Source: Octopus sinensis (taxonomy: Eukaryota). From it: a stretch of 64,000 nt of DNA. The notes under the pieces were generated by a model. The model ran no database searches. It was not told the origin of the DNA and worked only from the letters and a program-made list of their open reading frames with translations. Below, piece by piece: positions 1 through 55,190 of this stretch; position 1 is the first letter of the stretch, and the number at the start of each line of letters is the position of its first letter. The stretch covers positions 61,938,001 through 62,002,000 of the forward strand of contig NC_042998.1 of the NCBI RefSeq assembly GCF_006345805.1, in the 5' to 3' direction. The translations under genes were made by a program, and so were the position numbers.

Positions 1-820
1 CACGGGGCCGACCTGCCCGAGATGCGGTCAGAGCGACGAAACCGTACTGCACGCACTCATTCAGTGTCCAACAATTTCCGACCTGTGGGCTTATGTCGAA
101 CAACTGCTGTCACGTGTGGGACGAGTCGGTTTATCAGCTGAGTCTATCGTCAATATTGTCACACCTCCTTCCTTCAAACGGGAAGGAAGAGCTATTTTCA
201 TCATACTTGTGGCTATGGCGAAAGAATGTATCTGGTGGACGCGTCTGAAAGGATTGGAGACAAACACTTTCCTCTCTGGTCAATCTCTCATCAACTTCTT
301 CAAGTACCACTTGAAAAGGAAAGTGAGAGTAGAGAGGCAAGTTTTGTCTAGCGAATGTTTTAAAAAAAGATGGGTGAATGTAGCAAGAATGGCACGTATG
401 AATGACGAAGCCACCTTGAGCATAGTCCTATGAACCCAGAAATCGAAAACAGAGAGTTGCTTATTTGCAAAAAAAAAAAAAAAGAAATATAAAATGTGAC
501 TTCATTGACCGAGGTTAGCGTGGTCTTTTCCGTAGGCTTTTCTTTCCACGGGTAAACCTCACCTGTCCTCCCCTTTACACTTCATATTGACATTTCTGTG
601 ATAACGATCCCTATTGATCAATTTTTTTTTCCTCTCCCCCTTTTTTTTAACCCCCCCTTTTTTGTCCTCTTTCTCTCCTTTTACGATCCCTTTTGATCGA
701 AACTCCCCCCTTCCTTTTTTTTTTTTTTTTTAAACCCTTCAAAAGAAAAGCTCTACCTTGTAATTTGTTCTATCTGTGTGCAGCCCTGTGTGGCTAATAA
801 AGAAACATATCTATCAATCT
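1..820 (+). mobile_element. 3' end of an L1/Tx1-clade LINE (ORF2 C-terminus with CCHC knuckle, 3'UTR)
   Basis: Frame open from base 2 to 433: TCPRCGQSDETVLHALIQCP (C-x2-C-x8-H-x4-C). CpG-rich. U-rich 3'UTR with AATAAA near 796 that runs into (ATCT)n. Confidence 0.85.
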
Positions 821-2205: not shown

Positions 2206-2590
2206 TGCATATATATGCATACATGTATATAAAATTTATATACATTATTTAAAACAGTTTGATTAGGTTCCAAGCAACTTAAAGTTTTGCAGGTCTCTAA
2301 CAGAAGCCTGTCTCTTTAAGGTTTTAGATTACCCAATGGAAAGATACTAGAAGTCCAAGATGGCTACCTGAAGATAGGCTGCTACTGGTCAAGGCAGATC
2401 ATATTGTTTTGTCCAAGAATATCAGTTGCTCAGCAATAACAGTTCCTTTAGAAAGGGGTTTCTTTGACCATGTTGCTAGACAGTAAGCTGGTGGTACCTA
2501 GATGTCTGAGGGTGAAAGAAGTAAGACCAGTGTGTATGTGTGTGTGTGTGCGTGCACATGAACGCGTGTGTGTGTGTCTATGTGTACACA

Positions 2591-3485
2591 CATATGACAT
2601 CTGGTGTACCACAGGGATCCGTTCTTGGACCCCAACTGTTTGTTGCATACATTAATGATATTGATGCCAACTTGAAGGATGTTACAGTGTTGAAATATGC
2701 AGATGACAACAAGCTGTACCTTTAGATAAAAAGAACAGATCCTATATACTATAGATCTTTTCTACAATCAAACCTGGACACAATGCAGCAATGGATAAGT
2801 AACTGGCAACTAAAATTGACTGCAGTCAAGTACGTCACCATGCACATCAGGAAGAAAAAATGCTGTTTTTACATACTCCTTTAACCACATCAGTCTTTAG
2901 AAGTTTGTTAGTGAACATGCCCTGGGTATAATTGTAAATAGCGATCTTCAGTGAACAAACCACATCTCTAAGATTATCAAGAAGGCTGGGGGTGTCTTAG
3001 CATCATTCAGTAAGACCTTTGTCAACTAATCTCCATCTATTTAAAACTGTATCTGGCTCTGGTACATCTACACTTAGAATTTACATTACCAGTCTGGAAC
3101 CCTTAACTTGCTCAGCATATCAATATCCTGGAAGCTGTTTAGAAATGTGCAACCAGACAAATACCTGCCATCAGGCATCTACCATATTCTGAACATATTG
3201 CTTCTCTGGGCATGGACACATTAAAGCTCTGACATCTGACCACAGACTTGGTAGACATCAACAAAATTATTCATCATCTTTCCAACAACAACCTCAGGCA
3301 CCTTTTTGAATTCCATATGTCTAACACTCATGGACATGCTTACAATATCAAAAAACAATATAAAACCTACAACTTTCAGAAACATTTATTTCATGCACAG
3401 AATTGTTGAAGCATGGAATAAACTATTTGCATCAGTTGTTAGCTGTTGAAACACTGCATCCTTCAAAACTTCGATGCTTCCTGAT
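2591..3485 (+). mobile_element. Degraded CR1/L2-type LINE reverse transcriptase fragment
   Basis: MTSGVPQGSVLGPQLFVAYINDID...VLKYADDNKLY (RT motifs). Decayed downstream with frameshifts and stops. Confidence 0.9.
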
Positions 3486-5924: not shown

Positions 5925-6256
5925 ATATATCTATCTATCTATCTATCTTTTCACTTTCCTTCTTGACTACTTGTGGGCCAAAGGGGCATGCAACATCAAC
6001 TAAATAGTATATGTGATGCACCTTGTCCACCACCACTAGGTCTGGTCTGGTGTGCTCTAGCACCTGATCTATTTTGGTTGGGAAATCCCAGAGGATTTTG
6101 CTAGTGCCTGACTCCACCACTCTCTGCGGTTTGTGCTCATACCACATTTTGCCTCTCTCTTACCCCTACTTTTCGCACAGTTTCCAATGTAACACTTTTG
6201 CTACCTGGTTGTGTTTCCACAACTTGTAGTGGTTTTGGGAAAGTCTAGGGCATTTG
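5925..6256 (-). mobile_element. Fragment of an RLE-type (R4/NeSL-like) LINE: C-terminal zinc knuckle end and restriction-like endonuclease
   Basis: KCPRLSQNHYKLWKHNQVAKVLHWKLC..MWYEHKPQRVVES..KILWDFP..RPDLVVVDK..LVDVACPF..KESEKIDR, a PD-(D/E)xK RLE pattern. Confidence 0.85.
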
Positions 6257-11912: not shown

Positions 11913-12974
11913 TTAAGTTCAAAATTATACATTTTTTAATGCTTATAAACTTGACTTGCATATAAACATTTCGTACACTGATAGGACAGCAATAACTTTA
12001 CTCTTAGTAAAATGGGGGCTAATATATTTAACATGATGGACCAAGAAATATTAATTAGATATAATTACATCATAGGTGGAAAGAATGAACAAATTCTTGT
12101 CTTGATGATTCACTCTGATCAAAATAAATCTGCAGATAACACCACCACAATTGAAATTTATTAAAATCCAGCAAGTGTTATAGTTTTACATTCATATTTT
12201 ACTCTTGCTGGTATGTTTGGTAGGAGCAATCCCTACCATTTGTGATATATGATGAGTTAAGCATTGCAGCAACATTGAAAGTAAACTGCACACTCTCCCT
12301 CTTACCTACTGGTAGCCAAGCAGAGTTATCTACCTTGATTTGGTGTACAAAGAGTCACGTTCGAACAAATGTCTAAGTTGTCAGCAGCCCAGTACTAAAC
12401 CTCACAGCCATTGTACTCTGTGTATGTGTGTTATGCGTGCGTGTATGTGTGTGCTGTATTTTTTCCAGGTTTAACAAAACAAAAAACAATCTGAACTGGT
12501 ATATAAATACCTTTAAAATTAGTTGTAGATTTCATAAACATACATATATATAATTTATATATCTATGAATATACATATACAATATATATATATATAAATA
12601 TATATATATCTTATAAATATACTTTATATCATGTGTATGTATATATACATGTATATTATACACACACAAGCACATACATACACACATATACTGACATATA
12701 AATACACAAACACACACATAAAATATACACATTAAGATAATTAACTAAAAATATTTAATTGGTAAGACAAAATATTAGAATATTTGTGACAATTAAAATT
12801 ACAGTTAATTTCTTTTGAAACATATTTCTAAAAAAAAAAAAAAAGAAATATTACAATTAATTGAAAAATCATATTTTAAATATTACTATTACAACCAAGA
12901 AAAAAATATTCATTTGATTAATCAATATATATAAAAAAAAAATAGATAGTGATTGAAATTTTCAATGAATACAA

Positions 12975-15030
12975 AATGAATATTGATTTCTAATTTCGGC
13001 ACAAAGCCAGCAGTTTTGAGAGAAAAGGAGGTTAATCAATACTATCAATCCAGTACTTGACTGGTACTTTATTTTATCAACCTTGAAAGGATGAAAGGCA
13101 AAGTTAACCTTGGCAGGATTTGAACTCAGAATGTAAAAAGCCAGAAAAAAAACAAAACAAAAAAAAAACTCGCAAAGCATTTTTTCTGGCAATTTAACAA
13201 TTCAGCCAAAATAATAATAATAATAATAATAATGATAATAATAATATTAATAAGTGGAGCTAAGGTACAAATATACAAGGCCCGATATGCCCATCACAAT
13301 ATGACACCAGATAGGTAGATGCATGTGCCTTGCGTACCCTTATCAGATGTGTATATTGGGATTTGTATATCTGTACCCTAGAGTCACTTTTATAATAACA
13401 ATAATAATATTAACCTTTTCTACAAGTGGCACAAGGCCTGAAATTTCGGGGGGAGGGGACTAGTCAATTACATCAACTTCGGTGTTTCTCTGGTACTTTA
13501 GTTATCAACCCCAAAAAGATGAAAGGCAAAGTTGACCTCAGCAGAATTTGAACTCAGAACGTAAAGCATTTTGCCCAATGTGCTGACGATTCTGCCCGTT
13601 CACCAACTTAATAATAATAATTCTTTCTACTGGAAGCACAAGGCCTCAAATTTGGGGATAGGGATTAAGTCGATTACGACCCCAGTGCATAACTGGTACT
13701 AATTTTATCGACCCACAAAAGGATGGGATATTTAGAAATATCTATGCAGTATGGAAAACAACAATACATCAATTTTCAATATTTTTCTCATTCTGGCAAA
13801 TACAGGAGACAACTCTGGACATATTTTGACCTTATTAGACCTCCTCAGTAAAGCTATGCATAAACTTCCAAATACTTATTCTTTTCTACTCGAGGCACAA
13901 GGCCTGAAATTTTGGGGGAAGGGGCCAGTCAATTAGATCAACCCCAGTATGCAACTGTTACTTAATTTATTGACCCTGAAAAGATGAAAGGCAAAGTCAA
14001 CCTCAGTGGAATTTGAACTCAGAATGTAGAGGCAGACAAAATATTGCTAAGCATTTCACTCGGCATGCTAACAATTCTACTAGCTTGCTACCTTAATAAT
14101 GATAATAATAATTAATTCTTTTATTGGCCACAAGGGCTGAGAAAAATTAATAATAATGATATTAATAATAGTAGTAGTAGTAGTAATAACTTTTTTCTAC
14201 TGTAGGCACAGGGCCTGAAATTTTGGAGGAGAGTGCTAGATAATTATATTAACCCCACTGCTCAATTTGTATTTATTTTATTGACCCTTAGAAAAGGACG
14301 ATAGGCAAAGCTAGCCGTGGCAGGATTTGAAATCAGAACTTGGGGGGGGGGAATGCAGTTAAGCATTTTGTCTAATGCTTTAACGATTCTGCCAGATAAT
14401 TACCAGAATAACTTATAATAATAATAATAATCCTTTCTACCATAAACACAAGGCCTGAAATTAATGGGGAAGGGACTAGTCGATTACACTGACCCCCAAT
14501 ATTTGACTGGAACCAAATTTATTGCACCCCACCAAAGGATGAAAGACAAAGTTGACCTCAGCAGAATTATATAATGGTTTCAAATTTTGGTACAAGGCCA
14601 GCAATTTTGGGGGAGGGAGTAAGTTGATTACAGCGACCTGAGTGCTCAACTGGTACTTTATTTTATCAACCCTGAAAGGATGAAAAGCAAAGTCAACCTT
14701 AGCAGCATTTGAACTCATGGTGTAAAGACAGATGAAATACTGCTAAACATTTGTCCAGTGTGCTAACAATTCGGCTAGCTCACTACCTTAATAATAATAA
14801 TCCTTTCTACTATATAAGCACAAGGCCTGAAAAATTTTTTTGTAGGAGGGGCTAGTCGATTACACCAACCCCAGTGTTTCACTGGTACTTAATTTATCAA
14901 CCCCGAAAGGATGAAAGGCAAAGTCAACCTTGGCAGAATTTGAACCGAGAACATAGCAATGGGTGAAATATTGTTAAGCATTTCATCCAGCATGCTAACG
15001 ACTCTGCCAGCTTGCAGCATTAATAATAAT
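12975..15030 (-). mobile_element. Cluster of about 8 head-to-tail tRNA-derived SINE copies separated by (AAT)n
   Basis: Repeated ggcacaaggcctgaaa...ggatgaaaggcaaagtcaacct...tttgaactcag units. Confidence 0.9.
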
Positions 15031-18706: not shown

Positions 18707-18751
18707 TCACTCTCCTTTAGGTTCTTCATCTGTGTCTTCAAGAACGGAATC
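18707..18751 (-). CDS. BCL2L14: BCL2L14-like gene, last coding exon (DSVLEDTDEEPKGE*), no TM anchor
   Basis: Acceptor ttttcttcctacag|GAT, phase 0, completes BH2 as GGW|DSVL. TGA at 18709-18707. Confidence 0.85.
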   Translation of the reverse strand, partial: DSVLEDTDEEPKGE

Positions 18752-20044: not shown

Positions 20045-20200
20045 CATTTACCTAAAACTCTAGCACCCTCTTCAGAACATTCTCCTCACCCCTCCTCAAC
20101 ACATGCCCATACCACCACACTCCATTAGCCCTTGTCAGCCATTTCACTGATTCCTCCAACCCCAGCACCCCCATCAAGTCCTCAGTCCTCCCCTTATCAA
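20045..20200 (-). mobile_element. RTE-clade LINE ORF C-terminal fragment
   Basis: LGLEESVKWLTRANGVWWYGHVLRRGEENVLKRVLEF resembles the RTE RxxRLRWxGHVxR motif. Confidence 0.75.
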
Positions 20201-20283
20201 ACATCGTCATGATAAAATGATATTTATGAGGTGAAAATGTCAAATATCTTTAAAATATTCTAACAAAGATTAAACATACGTAC

Positions 20284-20532
20284 CCAACCACCTTTCTCCA
20301 CAATGAATGCTGCACACTTATCCTCAAAGTATCGCAGAGTTAGTTCTTTTATCTGGGAAGCCATTGCACGAAAAGGTCCAACAAGGTTGATAGCTGCCTT
20401 GGAAAGGAAGAAGAGAGCTGCCACCTCTTGTAAGCCACTCTTGTCTTTAGAGTATGCTTCAAAAGTCTCTTTGAAATTCTGATAGGTAAGTTGTTTAAGT
20501 ATGTCTATGACAGCTTCACTTGGGAACTGACT
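20284..20532 (-). CDS. BCL2L14: BCL2L14-like gene, coding exon 5 (Bcl-2 helical core and BH2: LTYQNFKETF...YFEDKCAAFIVEKGGW)
   Basis: Acceptor ttgttttccag|AGT and donor TGG|GTACGT immediately after GGW, the conserved Bcl-2-family BH2 intron position. Confidence 0.9.
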
Positions 20533-22484: not shown

Positions 22485-22546
22485 AGAGGTTTTTATAGAA
22501 AGAATGTATTCCACAAGTTCTTTCTCTAATTCACTCAGTTCTGGTG
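22485..22546 (-). CDS. BCL2L14: BCL2L14-like gene, coding exon 4 (APELSELEKELVEYILSIKTS)
   Basis: 62-nt exon absent from the ORF track. Acceptor attattttacag|CA and donor TCT|GTAAGT. Its phase 1-to-0 is exactly what is needed to bridge exons 3 and 5. Confidence 0.85.
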
Positions 22547-22664: not shown

Positions 22665-23135
22665 TTGTTTCAAATTTTGGCACATGGCTAGCAATTTTTT
22701 AAGGACGGAGTTAGTTGATATCACTGATTCAAGTACTTGGCTGCTACTTTATTTGTTGACTCCAGTGCATAACTGGTATTCATTTCATCGACCCAAAAAG
22801 GATGAGAGGCAAAGTTGGCCTCAGCAGAATTTGAACTCAGAACATAAAGACAGATGTATACCACTAAGCATTTTGCCTGGTGTGCTAATGATTCTGCCAG
22901 TTCACAGCCTTAGTAATAGTAATAATCCTTTCTTCCTTTCAGGTACAAGGTCTGATATTCGGGGGAAGGGGATAGTCGATTACATCAGCCAGAGTACTCA
23001 GCTGGTATTTATTTTACTGATCCCAGGAGGATGAAAGGCAAAATTGCTCTCACCAGAATTTGAACTCAGAACGTAAAGACAGACAAAATGCTGCTAAACA
23101 TTTTTCCCAGAGTGCTAACAATTCTGCCAGCACAC
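22665..23135 (-). mobile_element. Two tandem SINE copies in the intron between exons 3 and 4
   Basis: Same family as the 13-15 kb cluster. Confidence 0.8.
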
Positions 23136-23679
23136 TGCCATCATTAATAATGATGATGATGATGATCATCATAATAATAATAATAATAATAATAATAGCA
23201 ATAACAACAACAGCAATAATAATAAAAACAATAATAATTGTACTTTAATATCTTTACTGTGAATTTTTAGAAAAGAAACTCTTAGAAAGTAGTTAATGAT
23301 CAAATATAGTAACTGAGGTACACATTTAATAAACTTTTAGAAGTTTAAATATTTGAGATGGAAATGCAAGTTGTGCATGCATAGGCATATATTAGAGTTA
23401 AATAAGTTTTTAATTCAAATTTGATGTTAATAAGTTCAATAAAAAAAAATTGTAATCATATTGATTGAGTTTTGTTTTTCACAATATAAATTAACAACGA
23501 ATGTAACATGAAACAGATGTAACATGAAACAGATGCATTAAAATTTGGTGTAATTTACTTTGAATGTAACATAAACAGATTACTAATCATAATCAAATTA
23601 ATTGCTTGTGCCAGAACGTAAGAACTTGAACTGAGAAGAAAGTAGAGATAATAATTACATTGGATTCTAGCACAGGCAC

Positions 23680-23826
23680 CTTCTGAATCAGATGCTGATG
23701 TCTGTGTATCAGCGAGATTCATCAGTTTATCAGCCACTCGTTTAAACATATCAGTTTTTGATTGGTCTTCGCTAGGTTCAGAAGACATAACGCCGCCGAC
23801 AGCACCATCAACTTCATCAAATTCAT
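23680..23826 (-). CDS. BCL2L14: BCL2L14-like gene, coding exon 3 (DEFDEVDG...FKRVADKLMNLADT; caspase-type site and BH3-like motif)
   Basis: Acceptor tttttcttgttataaacag|AT, phase 1. Donor is either GAAG|GTGCCT (23680) or CAAT|GTAATT (23659); both are phase 1. Confidence 0.8.
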
Positions 23827-25371: not shown

Positions 25372-27460
25372 GATATCTAGACTTTATTATTCTTTTACTG
25401 TTTTCTGTGACTGAAATGCAGCCATGCAGTGATTGCTGTGGTTTTGGTTATTAATGTCAATGCCAATCAATTGTGGGCAGCATATTTTGTTGTTCTCAAA
25501 AGGAACTGTTACATTTTAAACAAAGGGAAAACGTTGCTGCCAAACCTACTCATTTCCTCCCTCAAAGTAATTTTCTGACCAGCAAGGGACTCATTTTATA
25601 TTTGTGTAGATTTAAAAATACAAGTTTACGACTTAGTTTTGGAAAACCTTTCAACAAGTTTGTAACATATCACTATCATAACTTTTGTATTGATCTCTGG
25701 TAATTTTGATGTAGAAAATCTAAAATGACAGCAAATACAAGCCAGTAAACATATCTATCCTCACTCCTCTCACACCATTTCTCTGTTATCTCAAAAATCA
25801 CACATTTGTTCCCCACCACTTACCCAATAAACTGATTTGTACACTCTATGTTATCTTATCAGTACAGAAATCGTCAGAGCTTAAAATAAAACAATTATTG
25901 TTTGATAATTTCTTGACAAACCAAGTCAGAAATGAAATTTCACTTGAAGCCATTTCACTTCACTTACATCACTATTACGTTAGAAAGAGCATGAACATCA
26001 CAACTACCACTCCTCTTCAATTAGGCAATAGACCTGTGTTTGAAACAATAACATGTAATAAAATAATTGTTTCTAACATAAGCAAAGAGCTGAAATTTAG
26101 GAGAGGCTTAGTCAATTAAATTAATCTCAGTACTTGATTGATATTTTATTTTATCAACCTCGAGAGGATGAAACGCAAAGTTATCTAGGTGAGAGTGAAC
26201 TAATAATGTTAGTATGTGCTGATGCCATGTAAAAAGCATCCAGTATACTCCACAAAGTGGCTGGTGTTAGGAAGGGCATCCAACTGTAGAAACCAAGCCA
26301 AGACAGACTATGGAAAATGGTGCAGCTCCTGTTAAACCATTCAACCAGCATGGGAAACAGACATTACATGATGATGATTTAATACTGTAACAATTCTGCT
26401 AATCTAATAAAATAATTGCTTCTGATTTGGTCAAAAAAGCAAACAATTCTGTGGGAAAGGAATTAGAAAATTTAAAGTGTGCAAGTTCAGAGCCAATTCC
26501 TTGCCTTCAGTTGCAGCAGGCTACCAGTGCCTGATCTGCTGTAGAGCCTAAGCACACATTGGACTAATTGGCCACAGCCAGACACACCATGACCTGTCCT
26601 CTTCTCCATGTGATGTCCTTGGTCACCATTGGTAACAACAGATGAACTAATAGTGAGACATCAAACTGGATCAGTTGGTATGCTGCTATCTTGGCCATCT
26701 AAAGCACAGGAAAGAAACTAAATATTTTAACTGTCAATATAATAAAGAAAAAAAATGATTGTGTGATGTTCATGCCTTTCTCTGAGAACAATGACATATG
26801 GAATTTATTCACCATTACTTTGGGATTAAAATCAACTCATAGATTTCATTCATAGAAAGTTGGACTTTATTTCTTCACTGATTTTAAACAAAACGTAAAA
26901 GTCCTTACAGTCAATTTAGTGTGTTCATTAACTTCATTAAACCCAGAAGGATAAAAGACAAACTCAAACTGAAAAGTACTCAAAATAAGAACATAAAATT
27001 TTGTGACTAAATACTGCAAAACATTCAAAACATTTTGTCCTTTGTGATTGTACCTGGTTGTGTCAAACCACCACCTTTATATATTACTTGCCAATAAACT
27101 AGTAAGTTAATAAAGACAACGACAACATATATGAGAGGTGCAACAAAAAATATAAATAGCTTAACTATAAGAATAAAAAAAACCCATTTACCAGTTGCGT
27201 AGTACTGATGAAGGCAATGAGTGATGAGTGAGTACATAAAATACATTATTTTAGTTTGAGAAAGACACAGAAACAGAAGCTGAGATGTAGAAATATTCAT
27301 GATACCATCAAGTCATTTAATCTGAACTAGTGTTTTCAGAGATAGCCAGGCCCATAGTATGTGGGACAAGCTAGGGTTTGATAAAGCAATTGCGTGAACA
27401 AGACACATAGGGTGCACTTAATTTTGATATTTTAAAAATGTTTTATTTTTACTGATTTGA

Positions 27461-28365: not shown

Positions 28366-28755
28366 CATTATTAACTTCAGTATTATCACAGTCACTGAGA
28401 TGCTCATAATGCTCAACAGATGATCTGCGTTGAGTCAGACCATCTGGTGTACAAACAGTCGTTACTTTCTCAACGTGTTCAGCCTTAAATTCAAAATTTC
28501 CTCGATCTGGAAGCTCACTGGTAAAAACTGGATTAATGTTCAGATGCAAATTGTTTCGTGGAGCTGAAGTCTCAATAAGTGGATAGTCATTCTCAGCGTC
28601 ATTGTCTAATGCTATAATCTCATTGAGAACATTTGTTGTAGTGCTATCTTTATTATCTTTACTTTCTTCTTTGATTACGTGTATAGCTTTATCATTGCCT
28701 TCAGATGCTGTTCGGCGATGGATGTTTTGAACAATATTCCTCTGCTCAGTGCTTT
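28366..28755 (-). CDS. BCL2L14: BCL2L14-like gene, coding exon 2 (acidic/low-complexity linker, ESTEQRNIVQ...NTEVNN)
   Basis: 390 nt, stop-free, phase 1-1. Acceptor ttgaacag|AA and donor AATG|GTAAGT. Includes the 28184..28549 ORF frame. Confidence 0.85.
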
Positions 28756-32429: not shown

Positions 32430-33291
32430 CTTTTCTCCCAAGAGAGAGGGTTTTCTTCCCATTTCTGTGAAGTGATTTTAATTTGTTAAGAGATGATGGC
32501 AGTCCTTTAGAACCTGAATTGTCTGAACTTTCCTTAATGCTAAGATGAGATTCAATATGACGTGACTCACCATTCTTCTCTTTTATTTTCTTTGACTCCC
32601 AGATTTCCCCTTCACGAAGGGTAATCTCAGTTTTTTGGCAAGGAATATCTGATATTGTAGACGATTGACGAATGTGTGTCCTTGTATAGGTTGTCACTTC
32701 TTTCAGTACTTTATCTTTTGTCTTGACCTTCTTCTTCTTTTTCTTATCTTTCTTCTTTATAAAAACATTGTCATTGTTCGCTTCCTTTTCGGCTTGAATT
32801 TTTTTAAACTTTCTCGATATGTTAAACGACATTCTCAGTCGTTCTTTTGCCCGTTTAAACAGGCTCTTTTTACGACGTACTCTTGAATCATTATCAGAGC
32901 TAGACGACGACGAATTACTCGAAGAATGCCGAAGTTTAGAAGAATTACAAAGAAAGCCAGGAGCTGATGATGGTGACTCAATACTCGAACTACATTCCTC
33001 ATCGCTTGCAAGAGGAGCAGTATTTTCATAAGTAATTTCAGTTTTTGTCATTGAATGGAAACTGTCATCACTTAGAATGGATTCATGTGATGCTTTTCTG
33101 TAACTGGCTCGACGCTTGAAATTTGGTTTCTCTTCAAACACTTCGAGTTCTGAAACTTTTTGGTAAACTGAGTTCATAGGAGTAATAGATGTGAGGCTTT
33201 CCTGATGCCTCATCAAGAACTCTTCCAAGATAGCATTAGCCTCTTGTTTAACCATAGGAATGGTTGACTGCCTACGCCTTTTCCCAACCAT
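32430..33291 (-). CDS. BCL2L14: Bcl-2 family (Bcl-G/BCL2L14-like) gene, coding exon 1: BH4-like N-terminal helix (VKQEANAILEEFL) plus Ser-rich and polybasic region
   Basis: 288-aa ORF. A polypyrimidine acceptor (cattttctttttctatag) lies 7 nt before the ATG at 33291. Phase-1 donor AAAG|GTTAGT at 32430 joins in frame to the next exon. Confidence 0.85.
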
Positions 33292-33439
33292 CTTGGAGCT
33301 ATAGAAAAAGAAAATGAAACAACTGTGAAAATCAACATATAAGCTAGTAAGTTAATAAATTACATCCATATTTAGATTTTTAAAATGTACAAAACAGTTA
33401 TGGCTCCATTCCTTTACTCACTAAAATAGTATCGACACA

Positions 33440-52760: not shown

Positions 52761-55190
52761 AGGTCAGGGACGAAATCTATTTTCTCACGCACCAGTTCGA
52801 ACGAGGAGGTCAATCCCAATCTAAATTATTTTTGTTAAAAATTAAAAATAGCTCGCATAATTCAACATTGACGTGGAGTTCATCCCCCACATCGAGATTT
52901 TAATTTCAATCACTATTTAAAACAATGTGTTTGTGTATGTGTAATCATTTGAGTTTGTAGAGTTAAATGTGTCACATAGGATCGAAAACTTCAAATGACA
53001 CCACAAGATTTTATTTTTATTTAAGGTAATTTGAGATACAAATAAGATTTATTCTATAACGGAAAAAAAAAAAAAATTATATGAATGAACATCATTTAAT
53101 TACATACATACTCAGTTGTACATATATGTCTGAGTGTGAGTATGTTCGTTTGTGTGTTTTACTCAATTATTCAGTGTAGGTATATTACTCTAATAGACTT
53201 CTGATAAGTATTTTGATAAGCTTGTTGGTCATCGACTCTACTTCCAGATCAGGTAGAATGTATTTTAAAGGGTCGGTGTGTGTGAAGGCCGATAGTCAGT
53301 CATAAGACAGTGGTATGGTTTAAGAATGAAGCAAATTGAGGTGTTCAAATCATTTCATCATAAACTAAAACGTCGTTTATGGACAACAAAAATGACCTGA
53401 TGTAAAGTAGCTATGGGCAATAATAGACAACAGGTTGCCAAATCAATACTAGATAGACACATGTACACACACATTTTACATTGATATATATATATAACAA
53501 AGTAAAATTGGAAGGTACCGCACATACACACAAACACACACACACATATACATACATACACATACATACATGGACACACACAAATCAAATAGATAGATAG
53601 ATATACATGTATATATGTGTGTATCTGTTTGTATATTTATATAATATACATACACGCACACACACATATATATATTATGTATATATAATATATATACATA
53701 TACATATACATACATGTGCGTGTGTGTGTATGCGTTTATATATACATATGTCTGTGCGTGTATACATATATATACACACACGTTTTATGATGTTTAGTGA
53801 CGCTTCAGTAGAAACAGTAGAATTTATAAGTTTAGATAAATTCTAATAGCAAAGATTTCAAATTGATCACTGCTAACATGATAGTCTTGGATATGTTTTA
53901 TTATTTTTTTTTAAATACATAAAACAACAACAATAATAATCCTTTCCACTTTAGGCACAAGGCCTGAAATTTGGGGGTAGGGGGTTAGTCGAATACATCG
54001 ACTGCTATTTATTTTATTGAACTCGAAAGGATGAAAGACAAAGTTCGGGGCTAACACAACAATAACAACGAAATAATAATAATAATAATAATAATATAAT
54101 AATAATATAATAATAATAATAATAATAGCGATAATGATGATGATTTCATCTATTTGCCACAAGGGCGAAGGATGAGGGGGGACAATATAAAGACAAATAT
54201 GATGTGTGTGATTTTACATATAATGAAATGATAGGGAAAAAAAGAAGAAAAAGTGGGGGTCATGTTACACGGTATACAGTGGAAAAGAAGGGACATATAC
54301 ACAGTATAGAAAGTTTTTTTTTTTTTAAATAAAAAGGTGGGGAGGAGGATGATAGAGATGGAATCCTCCTGATACGGGAGGACCTCTAGGGATAATTGAG
54401 GAACCCCGCTGTGAAAACCAAGAGCAAGTGCCCTCTCCAATTCGTTCTCTCTAAAAATCACCAGAAAGGCTGACAAGAAATTTATAATTTAAATAACAAG
54501 CAAAATCTAATTAAAATATATTAAATATATTTTACCTGGCCCGGAACGTTGAGCTTCTCTCTTTCAGTGTCATATTATAAAACTTACTTCTTGGCAAATC
54601 TTTTAAAAATTCAAGATTCTTTGTTATATAAATATTTATATAAATATAAAGAATGTTTTTGTTTTGTTTTTTCTCAATCAAGAAATCAAAATATATATTT
54701 TGAAATTGTTGTAAGATTCAGCAAAACCGATGTACTTTTTTTGGTTTTAAATTATATCAAATAAATAGAAAAACAGGTTTTGCTTTTGCTTGGTTTTTGA
54801 ATTGGTAAAGTTTTTCGAGATTTTTTTTCTTCCTTTTAGAATGAGATAAATTTCGAAATAAATTAAATTAAATTAAATTAATCAAGAGTGTAAATTTTTG
54901 TCAATATTTTGTCCAAGTTGTAGACTAAGATATATAAATATAATATTCAATATATTTGTATATTAATTAAGAGTAAACTTTGTTTAACTTGCTCTCCTTG
55001 TAGGATTACTTTCGGACTATTGTCTAAAGCGGACGAGCTTTCTCTATTTATACATAAATAGGCGGGTTTTTATGCCTACGCATACATACGTTTGAATATG
55101 GGTTTCTAAGAATCAACGTGTGTATGTTTATTTTTATGTTATATGTATCCATGTGTGTGTGTGTGTGTGTGTGGTGTGTATGTTTGAATC

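What the first reader, a model, noticed from the sequence alone, without database searches (positions are those of the whole stretch)
23700..23826. Canonical caspase site DEVD|G about 25 aa upstream of a BH3-like motif: a BID/Bfk-like switch
Seen: exon 3 encodes DEFDEVDGAVGGVMSSEPSEDQSKTDMFKRVADKLMNLAD. Established: DEVD|G is the optimal caspase-3/7 site, BID is activated by cleavage upstream of its BH3, and human Bfk is reported to be cut at a DEVD before its BH3. Inference: cleavage would shed about 425 N-terminal residues and release a ~160-aa BH3-led fragment, a possible caspase feedback amplifier in a mollusc.
Basis: partly seen in the sequence, partly recalled or inferred. Interest (0 to 1): 0.72.

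Follow-up and report, generated by a model that had tools for sequence, protein, structure and literature searches.

The report
Caspase-site-gated BH3 protein in octopus
An unnamed octopus gene encodes a cell-death (Bcl-2 family) protein with a textbook caspase cutting site in a floppy linker just ahead of a BID-like "death helix"; the same layout recurs in unnamed relatives from molluscs to starfish, so it is a strong but untested candidate for the BH3 activator that molluscs were thought to lack.

Summary
Window 23826-23659 is coding exon 4 of 7 of a gene whose product is identical to Octopus sinensis LOC115232331 (606 aa, "uncharacterized").

- **The site.** DEVD(436-439)|G440 lies 24 residues before KRVADKLMNLAD. 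Cutting there would leave a 167-aa fragment.
- **Conservation.** D-x-[VI]-D-G-A-V-x-G is invariant in six cephalopod orthologues, and its flanks vary. A profile search found about 119 relatives across Bilateria; every source name seen is uninformative. A caspase-type x-[E/D]-[V/I/T]-D|G motif lies 10-55 residues before the BH3 in 22 of 46 relatives, against 1.4% expected.
- **Structure.** AlphaFold puts the site in a disordered linker between a β-rich N-terminal module and the BH3-like helix. A divergent Bcl-2 fold follows (the family profile matches Bcl-xL at E 3e-12). It has GGW but no BH1 tryptophan and no membrane anchor.
- **Closest motif.** The best natural PDB match to the helix profile is the BID BH3.

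A BID/Bfk-like, caspase-gated switch is therefore the best-supported reading. Cleavage and gain of killing activity are untested. Orthology to BID or Bfk is not shown, and exact DEVD is not conserved.

The parts
54536..54573 (-). Coding exon 1 (MTLKERSSTFRA, then 2 nt); ATG at 54573
   Evidence: Peptide mapping and GT donor; matches P0002.
32430..33298 (-). Coding exon 2 (residues about 13-303): N-terminal conserved helix, KKSLFKRAKERL motif, first three long β-strands
   Evidence: AF2 helices 26-50 and 159-188 and strands 209-272.
33187..33261 (-). Conserved N-terminal helix IPMVKQEANAILEEFLMRHQESLTS (residues 26-50); possible BH4-like/α1 helix (untested)
   Evidence: pLDDT 82-91; the [DE]A..ILEEFL motif is conserved across phyla; coordinates.
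32836..32871 (-). Basic motif KKSLFKRAKERL (residues 156-167), the most conserved N-terminal motif of the family
32521..32712 (-). β-strand module, part 1 (residues 209-272), polar and His/Thr-rich
   Evidence: AF2 strands 209-228, 237-253 and 258-272, pLDDT 83-94; coordinates.
28366..28755 (-). Coding exon 3 (residues 303-433, both ends on split codons); skipped in isoform P0004
28391..28495 (-). β-strand module, part 2 (residues 390-424; FEFKAEHVEKVTTV...VEHYEHLSD); ends 12 residues before DEVD
   Evidence: AF2 strands 390-404 and 410-424, pLDDT 92-93; coordinates.
23659..23826 (-). Coding exon 4, the exon of the finding: (D)EFDEVDG...KRVADKLMNLAD...ACARIQ
23807..23818 (-). DEVD, residues 436-439; predicted scissile bond D439|G440 (G440 = 23806-23804)
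   Evidence: D436, D439, G440, A441, V442 and G444 invariant in six cephalopods. Linker 428-448 has pLDDT below 50.
23693..23770 (-). Helix A (residues 452-477) carrying the BH3-like core KRVADKLMNLAD (23743-23708)
   Evidence: AF2 helix. K461, R462, A464, L467, A471 and D472 invariant. Helix profile matches BID, PXT1, BAK, BMF and BIM BH3 peptides.
22485..22546 (-).
   Evidence: AF2 helix 494-505. In non-cephalopod relatives this helix carries LRxxGD.
20284..20532 (-). Coding exon 6: helices C to F, degenerate BH1 (SGLQEVAALFFLS, 20439-20401) and BH2 GGW (20292-20284). The exon ends directly after the Trp codon.
18707..18751 (-). Coding exon 7: acidic tail DSVLEDTDEEPKGE plus stop; no transmembrane segment

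Best explanation
The gene encodes a soluble, latent Bcl-2-family protein that belongs to an unnamed family found across Bilateria.

Its layout, from N to C, is:
- a conserved N-terminal region (two helices plus a polar, His-rich β module);
- a roughly 25-residue disordered linker holding a caspase-type site (DEVD|G in Octopus sinensis);
- a BID-like BH3 helix;
- a divergent Bcl-2 helical bundle with BH2, no BH1 tryptophan and no membrane anchor.

The proposed mechanism is inferred, not shown. An active caspase cuts after D439. The 439-residue N-terminal part is removed or loosened. The 167-residue fragment G440-E606, which has the BH3 helix near its new N-terminus, then engages pro-survival Bcl-2 proteins and/or Bak/Bax, as tBID and truncated Bfk do, and this pushes mitochondrial apoptosis forward.

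In octopus the D at P4 points to an executioner caspase, which would make a feedback loop. In many relatives an I/L/V-E-x-D site, often in tandem with a D-E-x-D site, points to initiator caspases as well.

Shown here: the sequence, gene model, conservation, predicted disorder, fold and motif similarity. Inferred: cleavage, exposure of the BH3 and pro-death output.
For: - **Gene model.** It equals P0002 exactly.
- **Cephalopods.** Dx[VI]DGAVxG is an invariant island among variable, indel-rich flanks in six species.
- **Family.** The profile search gave 119 hits at E <= 1e-3 and 70 at E <= 1e-10, mostly 450-930 aa with the domain at the extreme C-terminus. Named members come from molluscs, a brachiopod, annelids, nemerteans, a bryozoan, a priapulid, a nematode, echinoderms and a hemichordate. 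Source names are 'uncharacterized'/'hypothetical' or evident mislabels such as 'starmaker-like'.
- **Site enrichment.** x[DEQSN][VIT]DG lies 10-55 residues before the BH3 in 22 of 46 representatives, against 1.4% expected from the rest of the same proteins (p about 2e-28, not corrected for phylogeny). Tandem sites such as SLEIDGDEVDG also occur.
- **Predicted structure.** Residues 428-448 are disordered, and helices lie at 452-477, 494-505, 514-522, 526-536, 543-560, 564-588 and 592-600.
- **Fold.** Foldseek probability is 1.0 for Bcl-xL, with Bcl-2, Bak, Bax, BOK and Mcl-1 lower in the list (0.35-0.98). The family profile matches Bcl-xL at E 3e-12. Pfam Bcl-2 is hit by 32 of 35 members.
- **BH3.** The best natural PDB hit of the helix-A profile is the BID BH3 (E 0.018), followed by PXT1, BAK, BMF and BIM BH3 peptides. 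hhalign of the family against human BID 75-188 gives probability 63% and E 7e-5. Six of 35 members weakly hit Pfam BID.
- **Precedent.** Human Bfk has DEVD41|S42 in the loop before its BH3, and the truncated form is more pro-apoptotic (PMC8814693).
Against: - There are no biochemical data of any kind.
- The octopus protein scores below Pfam's Bcl-2 threshold (21-22 bits against 31.4).
- The octopus BH3 is imperfect: Ala replaces Gly, and Gln replaces the fourth hydrophobic residue.
- Cephalopods have lost the BH1 Trp and the GD of helix B.
- By spacing and by Pfam and Bcl-xL alignments, helix B rather than helix A matches the α2/BH3 of Bcl-xL. Helix A may therefore sit where α1 sits.
- About half of the relatives lack the strict motif.
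- The structurally similar Bcl-G turned out not to be pro-apoptotic in mice (PMC3481120, title and abstract).
- AF2 confidence is moderate (pLDDT 64-71) and TM-scores to Bcl-xL are about 0.5.
Confidence: 0.55

Rival explanations
1. The site is a real, conserved caspase site, but cleavage does not create a killer. It could inactivate the protein, relocalise it, or free the conserved N-terminal β/His-rich module for a non-apoptotic or other role. The Bcl-2-like domain would then act as a regulatory or docking domain, as suspected for Bcl-G.
For: - The N-terminal 439 residues are conserved and partly well folded in the model.
- Bcl-G, another protein with BH3 and BH2 and an N-terminal extension, is reported not to be pro-apoptotic (PMC3481120; review PMC10244440).
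- The cephalopod BH3 and BH1 are degenerate.
Against: - The BH3 signature of helix A (A464, L467, A471, D472) is the most conserved feature between the site and the BH1 region across phyla.
- It resembles functional BH3 peptides.
Confidence: 0.22
2. The conserved x-E-x-D-G block is not a caspase site. It would be an acidic binding or metal-binding motif, or the target of another protease such as taspase-like cleavage at x-[IV]-D|G-x-D-D. Its nearness to the BH3 would then be a matter of linker architecture only.
For: - In cephalopods the conserved block runs past the site (GAVGG).
- Several relatives read [IV]-D-G-x-D-[DE], which recalls the taspase1 motif as I remember it.
Against: - P1 Asp, P1' Gly, P3 Glu, P2 Val/Ile/Thr and P4 Asp or aliphatic make up the classical caspase signature.
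- Octopus lacks the D at P3'/P4' and the Q at P3 that taspase needs.
- The motif sits in a predicted disordered linker.
- An LIR reading of DEFDEV fails, because the Phe is Leu, Pro or Gly in the orthologues.
Confidence: 0.1
3. It is a chance motif: DEVD arose by drift in an acidic linker and has no function.
For: - The expected DEVD count per protein of this composition is small but not negligible (0.009).
- Proteome-wide, many DEVD motifs are never cut (general knowledge).
Against: - The motif is invariant in six cephalopods among variable flanks.
- It is enriched about 30-fold at the same position in distant relatives.
Confidence: 0.03

Closest known systems
BID (BH3-interacting domain death agonist, vertebrates)
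   Same: - A caspase site with Gly at P1' lies in a flexible loop about 25 residues before the BH3.
- The BH3 sequence is the best natural PDB match of the helix-A profile (ESQEEIIHNIARHLAQIGDE against the consensus eEKeelykkiAerLaeIGDs).
- Both are soluble, helical Bcl-2-type bundles with no membrane anchor.
- hhalign aligns helix A and helix B with the BID BH3 and α4.
- A short relative, P0115, hits only BID in the PDB.
   Different: - The piece removed is 439 residues with its own conserved helices and β module, not the two-helix p7.
- BH2 (GGW) is present here, and BID has none.
- Pfam BID is not matched by the octopus protein and is matched only below threshold by 6 of 35 relatives.
- The literature places BID only in jawed vertebrates (PMC8998228).
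Bfk / BCL2L15
   Same: - Both have BH3 plus BH2 without a BH1 Trp and without a membrane anchor.
- A DEVD site lies in the disordered loop directly before the BH3 helix.
- The truncated form is the active one in human Bfk (PMC8814693).
- The 167-aa octopus fragment is about the size of whole Bfk (163 aa, from memory).
   Different: - Bfk has only a short N-terminal α1/α1' piece.
- No sequence or fold hit to the Bfk crystal structure appeared among the best PDB matches.
- Orthology was not tested with a Bfk sequence.
Bcl-G / BCL2L14
   Same: It has an N-terminal extension followed by BH3 and BH2 at the extreme C-terminus, no BH1 and no membrane anchor (PMC10244440).
   Different: - No Bcl-G sequence was available in the tools, so there was no direct comparison.
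- No caspase gating is described for Bcl-G in the passages read.
Bcl-xL / Bcl-2 (multi-motif pro-survival proteins)
   Same: - They are the best sequence and fold matches of the C-terminal domain (E 3e-12; Foldseek probability 1.0).
- The intron directly after the GGW Trp codon is shared.
- From memory, caspase cleavage in their α1-α2 loop converts them into killers.
   Different: - The octopus protein has no NWGR, no BH4 and no membrane anchor.
- It has an extra BID-like BH3 helix before the core and a 439-residue N-terminal region.

Membership tests
Bcl-2 family (Bcl-2 fold, Pfam PF00452) | Significant sequence similarity to the family model | tested here: inconclusive
   The octopus protein alone scores 20.8-22.2 bits (E 2e-4 to 6e-4), below the gathering score of 31.4. 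The 35-member family profile matches Bcl-xL at E 3e-12, and 32 of 35 members hit PF00452, with a best E of 5e-9. Homology is therefore clear at family level.
Bcl-2 family (Bcl-2 fold, Pfam PF00452) | Helical bundle around a central hairpin (α5-α6) | tested here: met
   AF2 gives seven helices at 452-600, with pLDDT 82-94 over 520-590. The leading Foldseek hits to the C-terminal model are Bcl-xL (probability 1.0; TM by target 0.45-0.55), with Bcl-2, Bak, BOK and Mcl-1 lower in the list (0.35-0.98). With the full-length model, Bcl-xL ranks first and Bax, A1, Bcl-w and BHRF1 also appear, interleaved with low-probability non-Bcl-2 hits to the β part.
Bcl-2 family (Bcl-2 fold, Pfam PF00452) | BH2 motif (GGW) and the intron directly after its Trp codon (the intron hallmark is from memory) | tested here: met
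   G590, G591 and W592 are invariant in cephalopods. The exon ends ...GGT GGT TGG|gtacgt at 20284.
Bcl-2 family (Bcl-2 fold, Pfam PF00452) | BH1 motif (NWGR) | tested here: not met
   Octopus has KSGLQEV where Bcl-xL has VNWGRIV. Most non-cephalopod relatives keep G/S-W.
Bcl-2 family (Bcl-2 fold, Pfam PF00452) | C-terminal membrane anchor (present in many members, not all) | tested here: not met
   The C-terminus is acidic, DSVLEDTDEEPKGE.
BID | BH3 motif of BID type | tested here: met
   The best natural PDB hits of the helix-A profile are BID BH3 peptides (E 0.018-0.06). The octopus copy is V-A-D-K-L-M-N-L-A-D-T-Q, with Ala for Gly and Gln at the fourth hydrophobic position.
BID | Caspase cleavage in a flexible loop N-terminal to the BH3 | not testable with these tools
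   The sequence prerequisites are met: DEVD|G lies 24 residues upstream, is conserved and is in a low-pLDDT linker. Cleavage itself needs an experiment.
BID | Match to the Pfam BID model PF06393 above threshold | tested here: not met
   The octopus protein gives no hit. Six of 35 relatives give weak hits (best E 1.4e-4, 12.7-19.5 bits in the hits seen, cutoff 25).
BID | Absence of BH1 and BH2 | tested here: not met
   BH2 (GGW) is present and invariant.
Bfk / BCL2L15 | BH3 plus BH2 only, no membrane anchor, DEVD in the loop before the BH3 | tested here: met
   Features as listed in PMC8814693. The octopus C-terminal 167 residues show the same set.
Bfk / BCL2L15 | Orthology or specific sequence similarity to Bfk | not tested
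   No Bfk sequence could be fetched. Bfk did not appear in the 60 PDB sequence hits listed or in the 50 Foldseek hits.
Bcl-G / BCL2L14 | Specific sequence similarity to Bcl-G | not tested
   Only the architecture was compared, from the text of PMC10244440.

The most novel reading that the evidence does not exclude
This is a cephalopod member of an unrecognised, bilaterian-wide 'proto-BID' family of caspase-gated BH3 proteins built on a Bcl-2 fold. The family would predate, and may be ancestral or sister to, vertebrate BID, Bfk and Bcl-G. It would supply the BH3 activator reported as missing from molluscs.

Its conserved His-rich β module would act as an upstream sensor or autoinhibitor. A more remote variant is gasdermin-like logic, in which the cut frees the N-terminal β module as the effector.
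Probability: 0.35. Interest if true: 0.8.

Novelty: new variant of a known kind. Interest (0 to 1): 0.66.

Why it matters
Studies of oyster and lophotrochozoan apoptosis state that no BH3-only protein has been found in Mollusca (PMC5550854). An evolutionary survey places BID only in jawed vertebrates (PMC8998228).

If this family is cut by caspases and its BH3 is active, two things follow:
- The link from caspases to mitochondria (the BID/Bfk logic) would be ancient in Bilateria rather than a vertebrate invention.
- Molluscan mitochondrial apoptosis would gain its missing upstream activator.

The claim is directly testable with one recombinant protein and one D-to-A mutant. None of the named family members carries an informative name, so a functional result would allow gene models in many phyla to be annotated.

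Tried and rejected
- **Plus-strand reading.** The given coordinates on the + strand give an unrelated peptide without the motif.
- **First gene model.** I joined the finding's exon directly to the BH1/BH2 exon. The splice phases did not fit, and the orthologues revealed a 62-nt exon in between.
- **Word-indexed protein search for named vertebrate relatives.** Profiles A2 and A3 found only family fragments and no Bcl-G, Bfk or BID.
- **LIR (Atg8-binding) reading of DEFDEV.** The aromatic residue is not conserved (Phe, Leu, Pro, Gly).
- **N-myristoylation of the new Gly N-terminus, as in tBID.** The loose pattern fits all cephalopods and Elysia (G-A-V...) but only 10 of 29 family sites. It is kept only as a cephalopod/mollusc-level speculation.
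- **Structural identity of the N-terminal β module.** Foldseek gave only low-probability hits: hotdog thioesterases, the gasdermin A3 pore at probability 0.14, and outer-membrane proteins.
- **Taxon of the BID-like short relatives P0108 and P0115.** Only the run accessions were obtained (SRR21676461, SRR7507850). They are not mentioned in the searchable papers.
- **Literature search for the locus names.** It found nothing.
- **tRNA-like SINE next to the exon.** ARAGORN found no tRNA gene in the window.
- **Whether the N-terminal helix 26-50 packs on the Bcl-2 core as α1.** This could not be read, because neither coordinates nor PAE are available.

Full report
**1. Observation**

The + strand of 23700-23826 encodes an unrelated peptide without the motif. 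The reverse complement reads TDEFDEVDGAVGGVMSSEPSEDQSKTDMFKRVADKLMNLADTQTSASDSEGACARIQ.

I built the gene from open frames and splice signals, then corrected it with orthologues. There are seven coding exons, all with GT-AG boundaries:
- 54573-54536
- 33298-32430
- 28755-28366
- 23826-23659 (the finding)
- 20532-20284
- 18751-18707

The 1821-nt CDS translates to 606 aa and is identical to P0002, Octopus sinensis LOC115232331 isoform X2, "uncharacterized protein". DEVD is residues 436-439 and G440 follows. The BH3-like core KRVADKLMNLAD is residues 461-472. A cut after D439 leaves 167 residues.

Only three DxxD motifs occur in the protein. From its composition, 0.009 DEVD and 0.0003 DEVDG are expected.

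**2. Conservation in cephalopods**

Six orthologues were aligned: O. sinensis/vulgaris, O. bimaculoides, Argonauta hians, Acanthosepion pharaonis and two further sequences of unknown species that resemble Acanthosepion.
- D436, D439, G440, A441, V442 and G444 are invariant. The sites read DEVD, DEID, DEVD, DQVD, DQVD and DSVD.
- Positions 425-435 and 445-453 vary and carry indels.
- K461, R462, A464, L467, A471 and D472 of the BH3-like helix are invariant.

**3. A wider family**

A profile of the cephalopod C-terminal region, run against 1.84 billion representative proteins, gave 119 hits at E <= 1e-3 and 70 at E <= 1e-10. Most are 450-930 aa long and carry the domain at the extreme C-terminus.

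Look-ups gave source names that are uninformative: 'uncharacterized' or 'hypothetical', apart from evident mislabels on the Haliotis entries:
- bivalves: Crassostrea, Mizuhopecten, Pecten, Dreissena, Potamilus
- gastropods: Elysia, Haliotis, Nucella
- a brachiopod: Lingula
- annelids: Helobdella, Dimorphilus
- nemerteans: Lineus, Tubulanus
- a bryozoan, a priapulid and a nematode (Plectus)
- echinoderms: Antedon, Acanthaster, Holothuria
- a hemichordate: Glandiceps

No paper in the searchable library mentions the loci.

The shared architecture is:
- an N-terminal helix, [DE]A..ILEEFL
- RKKKSxFKRAKERL
- a variable region
- one or two x-E-x-D-G sites
- a BH3 of the form [EK]E.[ML]Y.KIA..L..I[AG]D.[YF]
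- a second helix, L..LE.EI...LR..GDR
- TY..F
- a BH1 remnant, GW.Q.A..F
- GGW[DE]S
- an acidic tail that often ends SELD

The strict motif x[DEQSN][VIT]DG lies 10-55 residues before the BH3 in 22 of 46 representatives. From the rest of the same proteins, 1.4% is expected (binomial p about 2e-28; the representatives are less than 50% identical, but the test is not corrected for phylogeny).

Many members carry tandem sites, an aliphatic-E-[VI]-D|G followed by D-[ED]-[VI]-D|[GS]. Examples are SLEIDGDEVDG and VEIDGVDEADG. In octopus the first site has decayed to TEVN-N.

**4. Structure**

AlphaFold2 was run on residues 403-606 with the 35-sequence alignment (pLDDT 70.8).
- Residues 403-451, including DEVD, are disordered.
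- Helices lie at 452-477 (A, BH3-like), 494-505 (B), 514-522, 526-536, 543-560, 564-588 and 592-599.

The full-length model (pLDDT 64) repeats this result.
- It places DEVD in a low-confidence linker, 428-448.
- It predicts that the N-terminal part is not simply disordered. It gives helices 26-50 and 159-188 and five long β-strands (209-272 and 390-424), with pLDDT 83-94.

In Foldseek searches against the PDB, the confident matches all belong to the Bcl-2 family.
- Bcl-xL scores probability about 1.0, with TM by target 0.45-0.55.
- Bcl-2, Bak, Bax, BOK, Mcl-1 and A1 score lower (about 0.35-0.98).
- The β part gets only low-probability hits.

**5. What family it is**

Sequence evidence for a Bcl-2 fold:
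- Pfam Bcl-2 scores 21-22 bits for octopus, below the threshold of 31.4, but it is hit by 32 of 35 relatives.
- The family profile matches Bcl-xL at E 3e-12 over Bcl-xL residues 86-193.
- GGW is invariant, and the exon ends directly after its Trp codon. From memory, this intron position is a hallmark of the Bcl-2 family.
- The BH1 Trp is absent in cephalopods, and there is no membrane anchor.

Evidence on the BH3-like helix:
- The 25-column helix-A profile has BID BH3 peptides as its best natural PDB matches (E 0.018). PXT1, BAK, BMF and BIM BH3 peptides follow.
- hhalign of the family against human BID 75-188 gives probability 63% and E 7e-5. It pairs helix A with the BID BH3 and helix B with BID α4. 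The BID sequence was taken from the output.
- A short relative of unknown taxon, P0115, hits only BID in the PDB, over the BH3 through α8. It also hits Pfam BID weakly.

There is one unresolved conflict. By spacing and by the Pfam and Bcl-xL alignments, helix B (LRxxGD in non-cephalopods) corresponds to the α2/BH3 of Bcl-xL. Helix A may therefore occupy the α1 position, or it may be an extra BH3. This is not settled here. On either reading, helix A is the first helix after the cut.

**6. Mechanism**

The best reading is a caspase-gated BH3 protein that works like BID and Bfk.
Human Bfk has DEVD41|S42 in the disordered loop before its BH3, and truncated Bfk is the stronger killer (PMC8814693).
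- Asp at P4 in octopus suits executioner caspases, which would give feedback. Aliphatic P4 in relatives suits initiator caspases.
- None of this has been tested biochemically.

The main rival is that cleavage serves another purpose. The N-terminal part is conserved and partly folded, and Bcl-G, which has a similar architecture, proved not to be pro-apoptotic (PMC3481120). Non-caspase readings and chance are unlikely.

**7. Novelty**

Oyster work states that no BH3-only homologue is known in Mollusca (PMC5550854). A survey places BID only in jawed vertebrates and found no lophotrochozoan BH3-only protein by seed searches (PMC8998228). The family described here is unnamed and does not appear in the searchable literature.

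It is a new variant of a known kind: Bcl-2 family, BID/Bfk-like logic, but with a large conserved N-terminal module and two BH3-like helices. Interest is moderately high. It rests on strong comparative evidence and no experiments.

Noticed in passing
window 32712-32521 and 28495-28391 (-), residues 209-272 and 390-424: AlphaFold predicts five long β-strands (15-20 residues each) with pLDDT 83-94 in the 'extension'. They are polar and rich in His and Thr (VEHYEHL; relatives read HTHKHGHVEQHHY and HVHISKHIHQTH), with alternating His that would line one face of a strand. No confident structural match was found. The weak hits include hotdog thioesterases and the gasdermin A3 pore (probability 0.14).
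   Followed up: partly
window 33261-33187 and 32871-32836 (-): Two N-terminal motifs are conserved across phyla: the helix [DE]A..ILEEFL and the basic RKKKSxFKRAKERL. The first loosely resembles a BH4/α1 helix. Whether it docks on the Bcl-2 core could not be checked.
   Followed up: partly
window 22532-22497 (-), helix B; relatives in alignment A3: Non-cephalopod relatives carry a second BH3-like signature in the next helix (LExEILxCLRxxGDR, like the Bcl-xL LREAGDEF). Cephalopods have lost the GD (ELVEYILSIKTS) and also the BH1 Trp, so the cephalopod copies are the derived ones.
   Followed up: partly
relatives P0010-P0113 (C-termini): Most non-cephalopod members end in an acidic tail that finishes ...[ST]D[ST]E[LV]D at the very C-terminus. 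Cephalopods end ...DTDEEPKGE or with a Lys-rich extension. The function is unknown.
   Followed up: no
window 28755-28366 (-) and within 33298-32430 (-): Deposited isoforms differ. P0004 (O. vulgaris, 461 aa) skips the 390-nt exon and joins ...SLGRK to DEFDEVDG. P0001 (544 aa) uses an internal donor in the large exon. Both keep the site and the BH3.
   Followed up: no
window 23806-23792 (-), G440-G444: The would-be new N-terminus G-A-V-G-G is invariant apart from one Tyr in cephalopods, and it is G-A-V-S-A in the gastropod Elysia. It fits the loose N-myristoylation pattern, as does the tBID Gly. Only 10 of 29 family sites fit.
   Followed up: partly
window 20055-20249 (-), 1-430 (+), 2525-2722 (+), 5938-6159 (-): Retroelement fragments lie in introns and flanks. 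They are reverse-transcriptase-like open frames such as ...ANGVWWYGHVLRR... and ...VLKYADDNKLY... The first lies directly downstream of the GGW exon and could mislead exon finding.
   Followed up: no
window 12965-13201, 14479-14742, 22724-22909, 26111-26266, 26870-27076 (-) and others: A dispersed repeat shows the recurring open-frame peptide ...NFAFHPF.VDKIKYQ.... Long (TATG/CATA)n-type microsatellites also occur throughout. This is typical octopus intronic repeat content.
   Followed up: no
L001 (P0115, run SRR7507850) and L002 (P0108, run SRR21676461): These are two short relatives (332 and 291 aa) of unknown taxon. They have DEVD|G before the BH3 and no helix B, and they hit BID in Pfam and in the PDB. 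They may link this family to BID/Bfk.
   Followed up: partly
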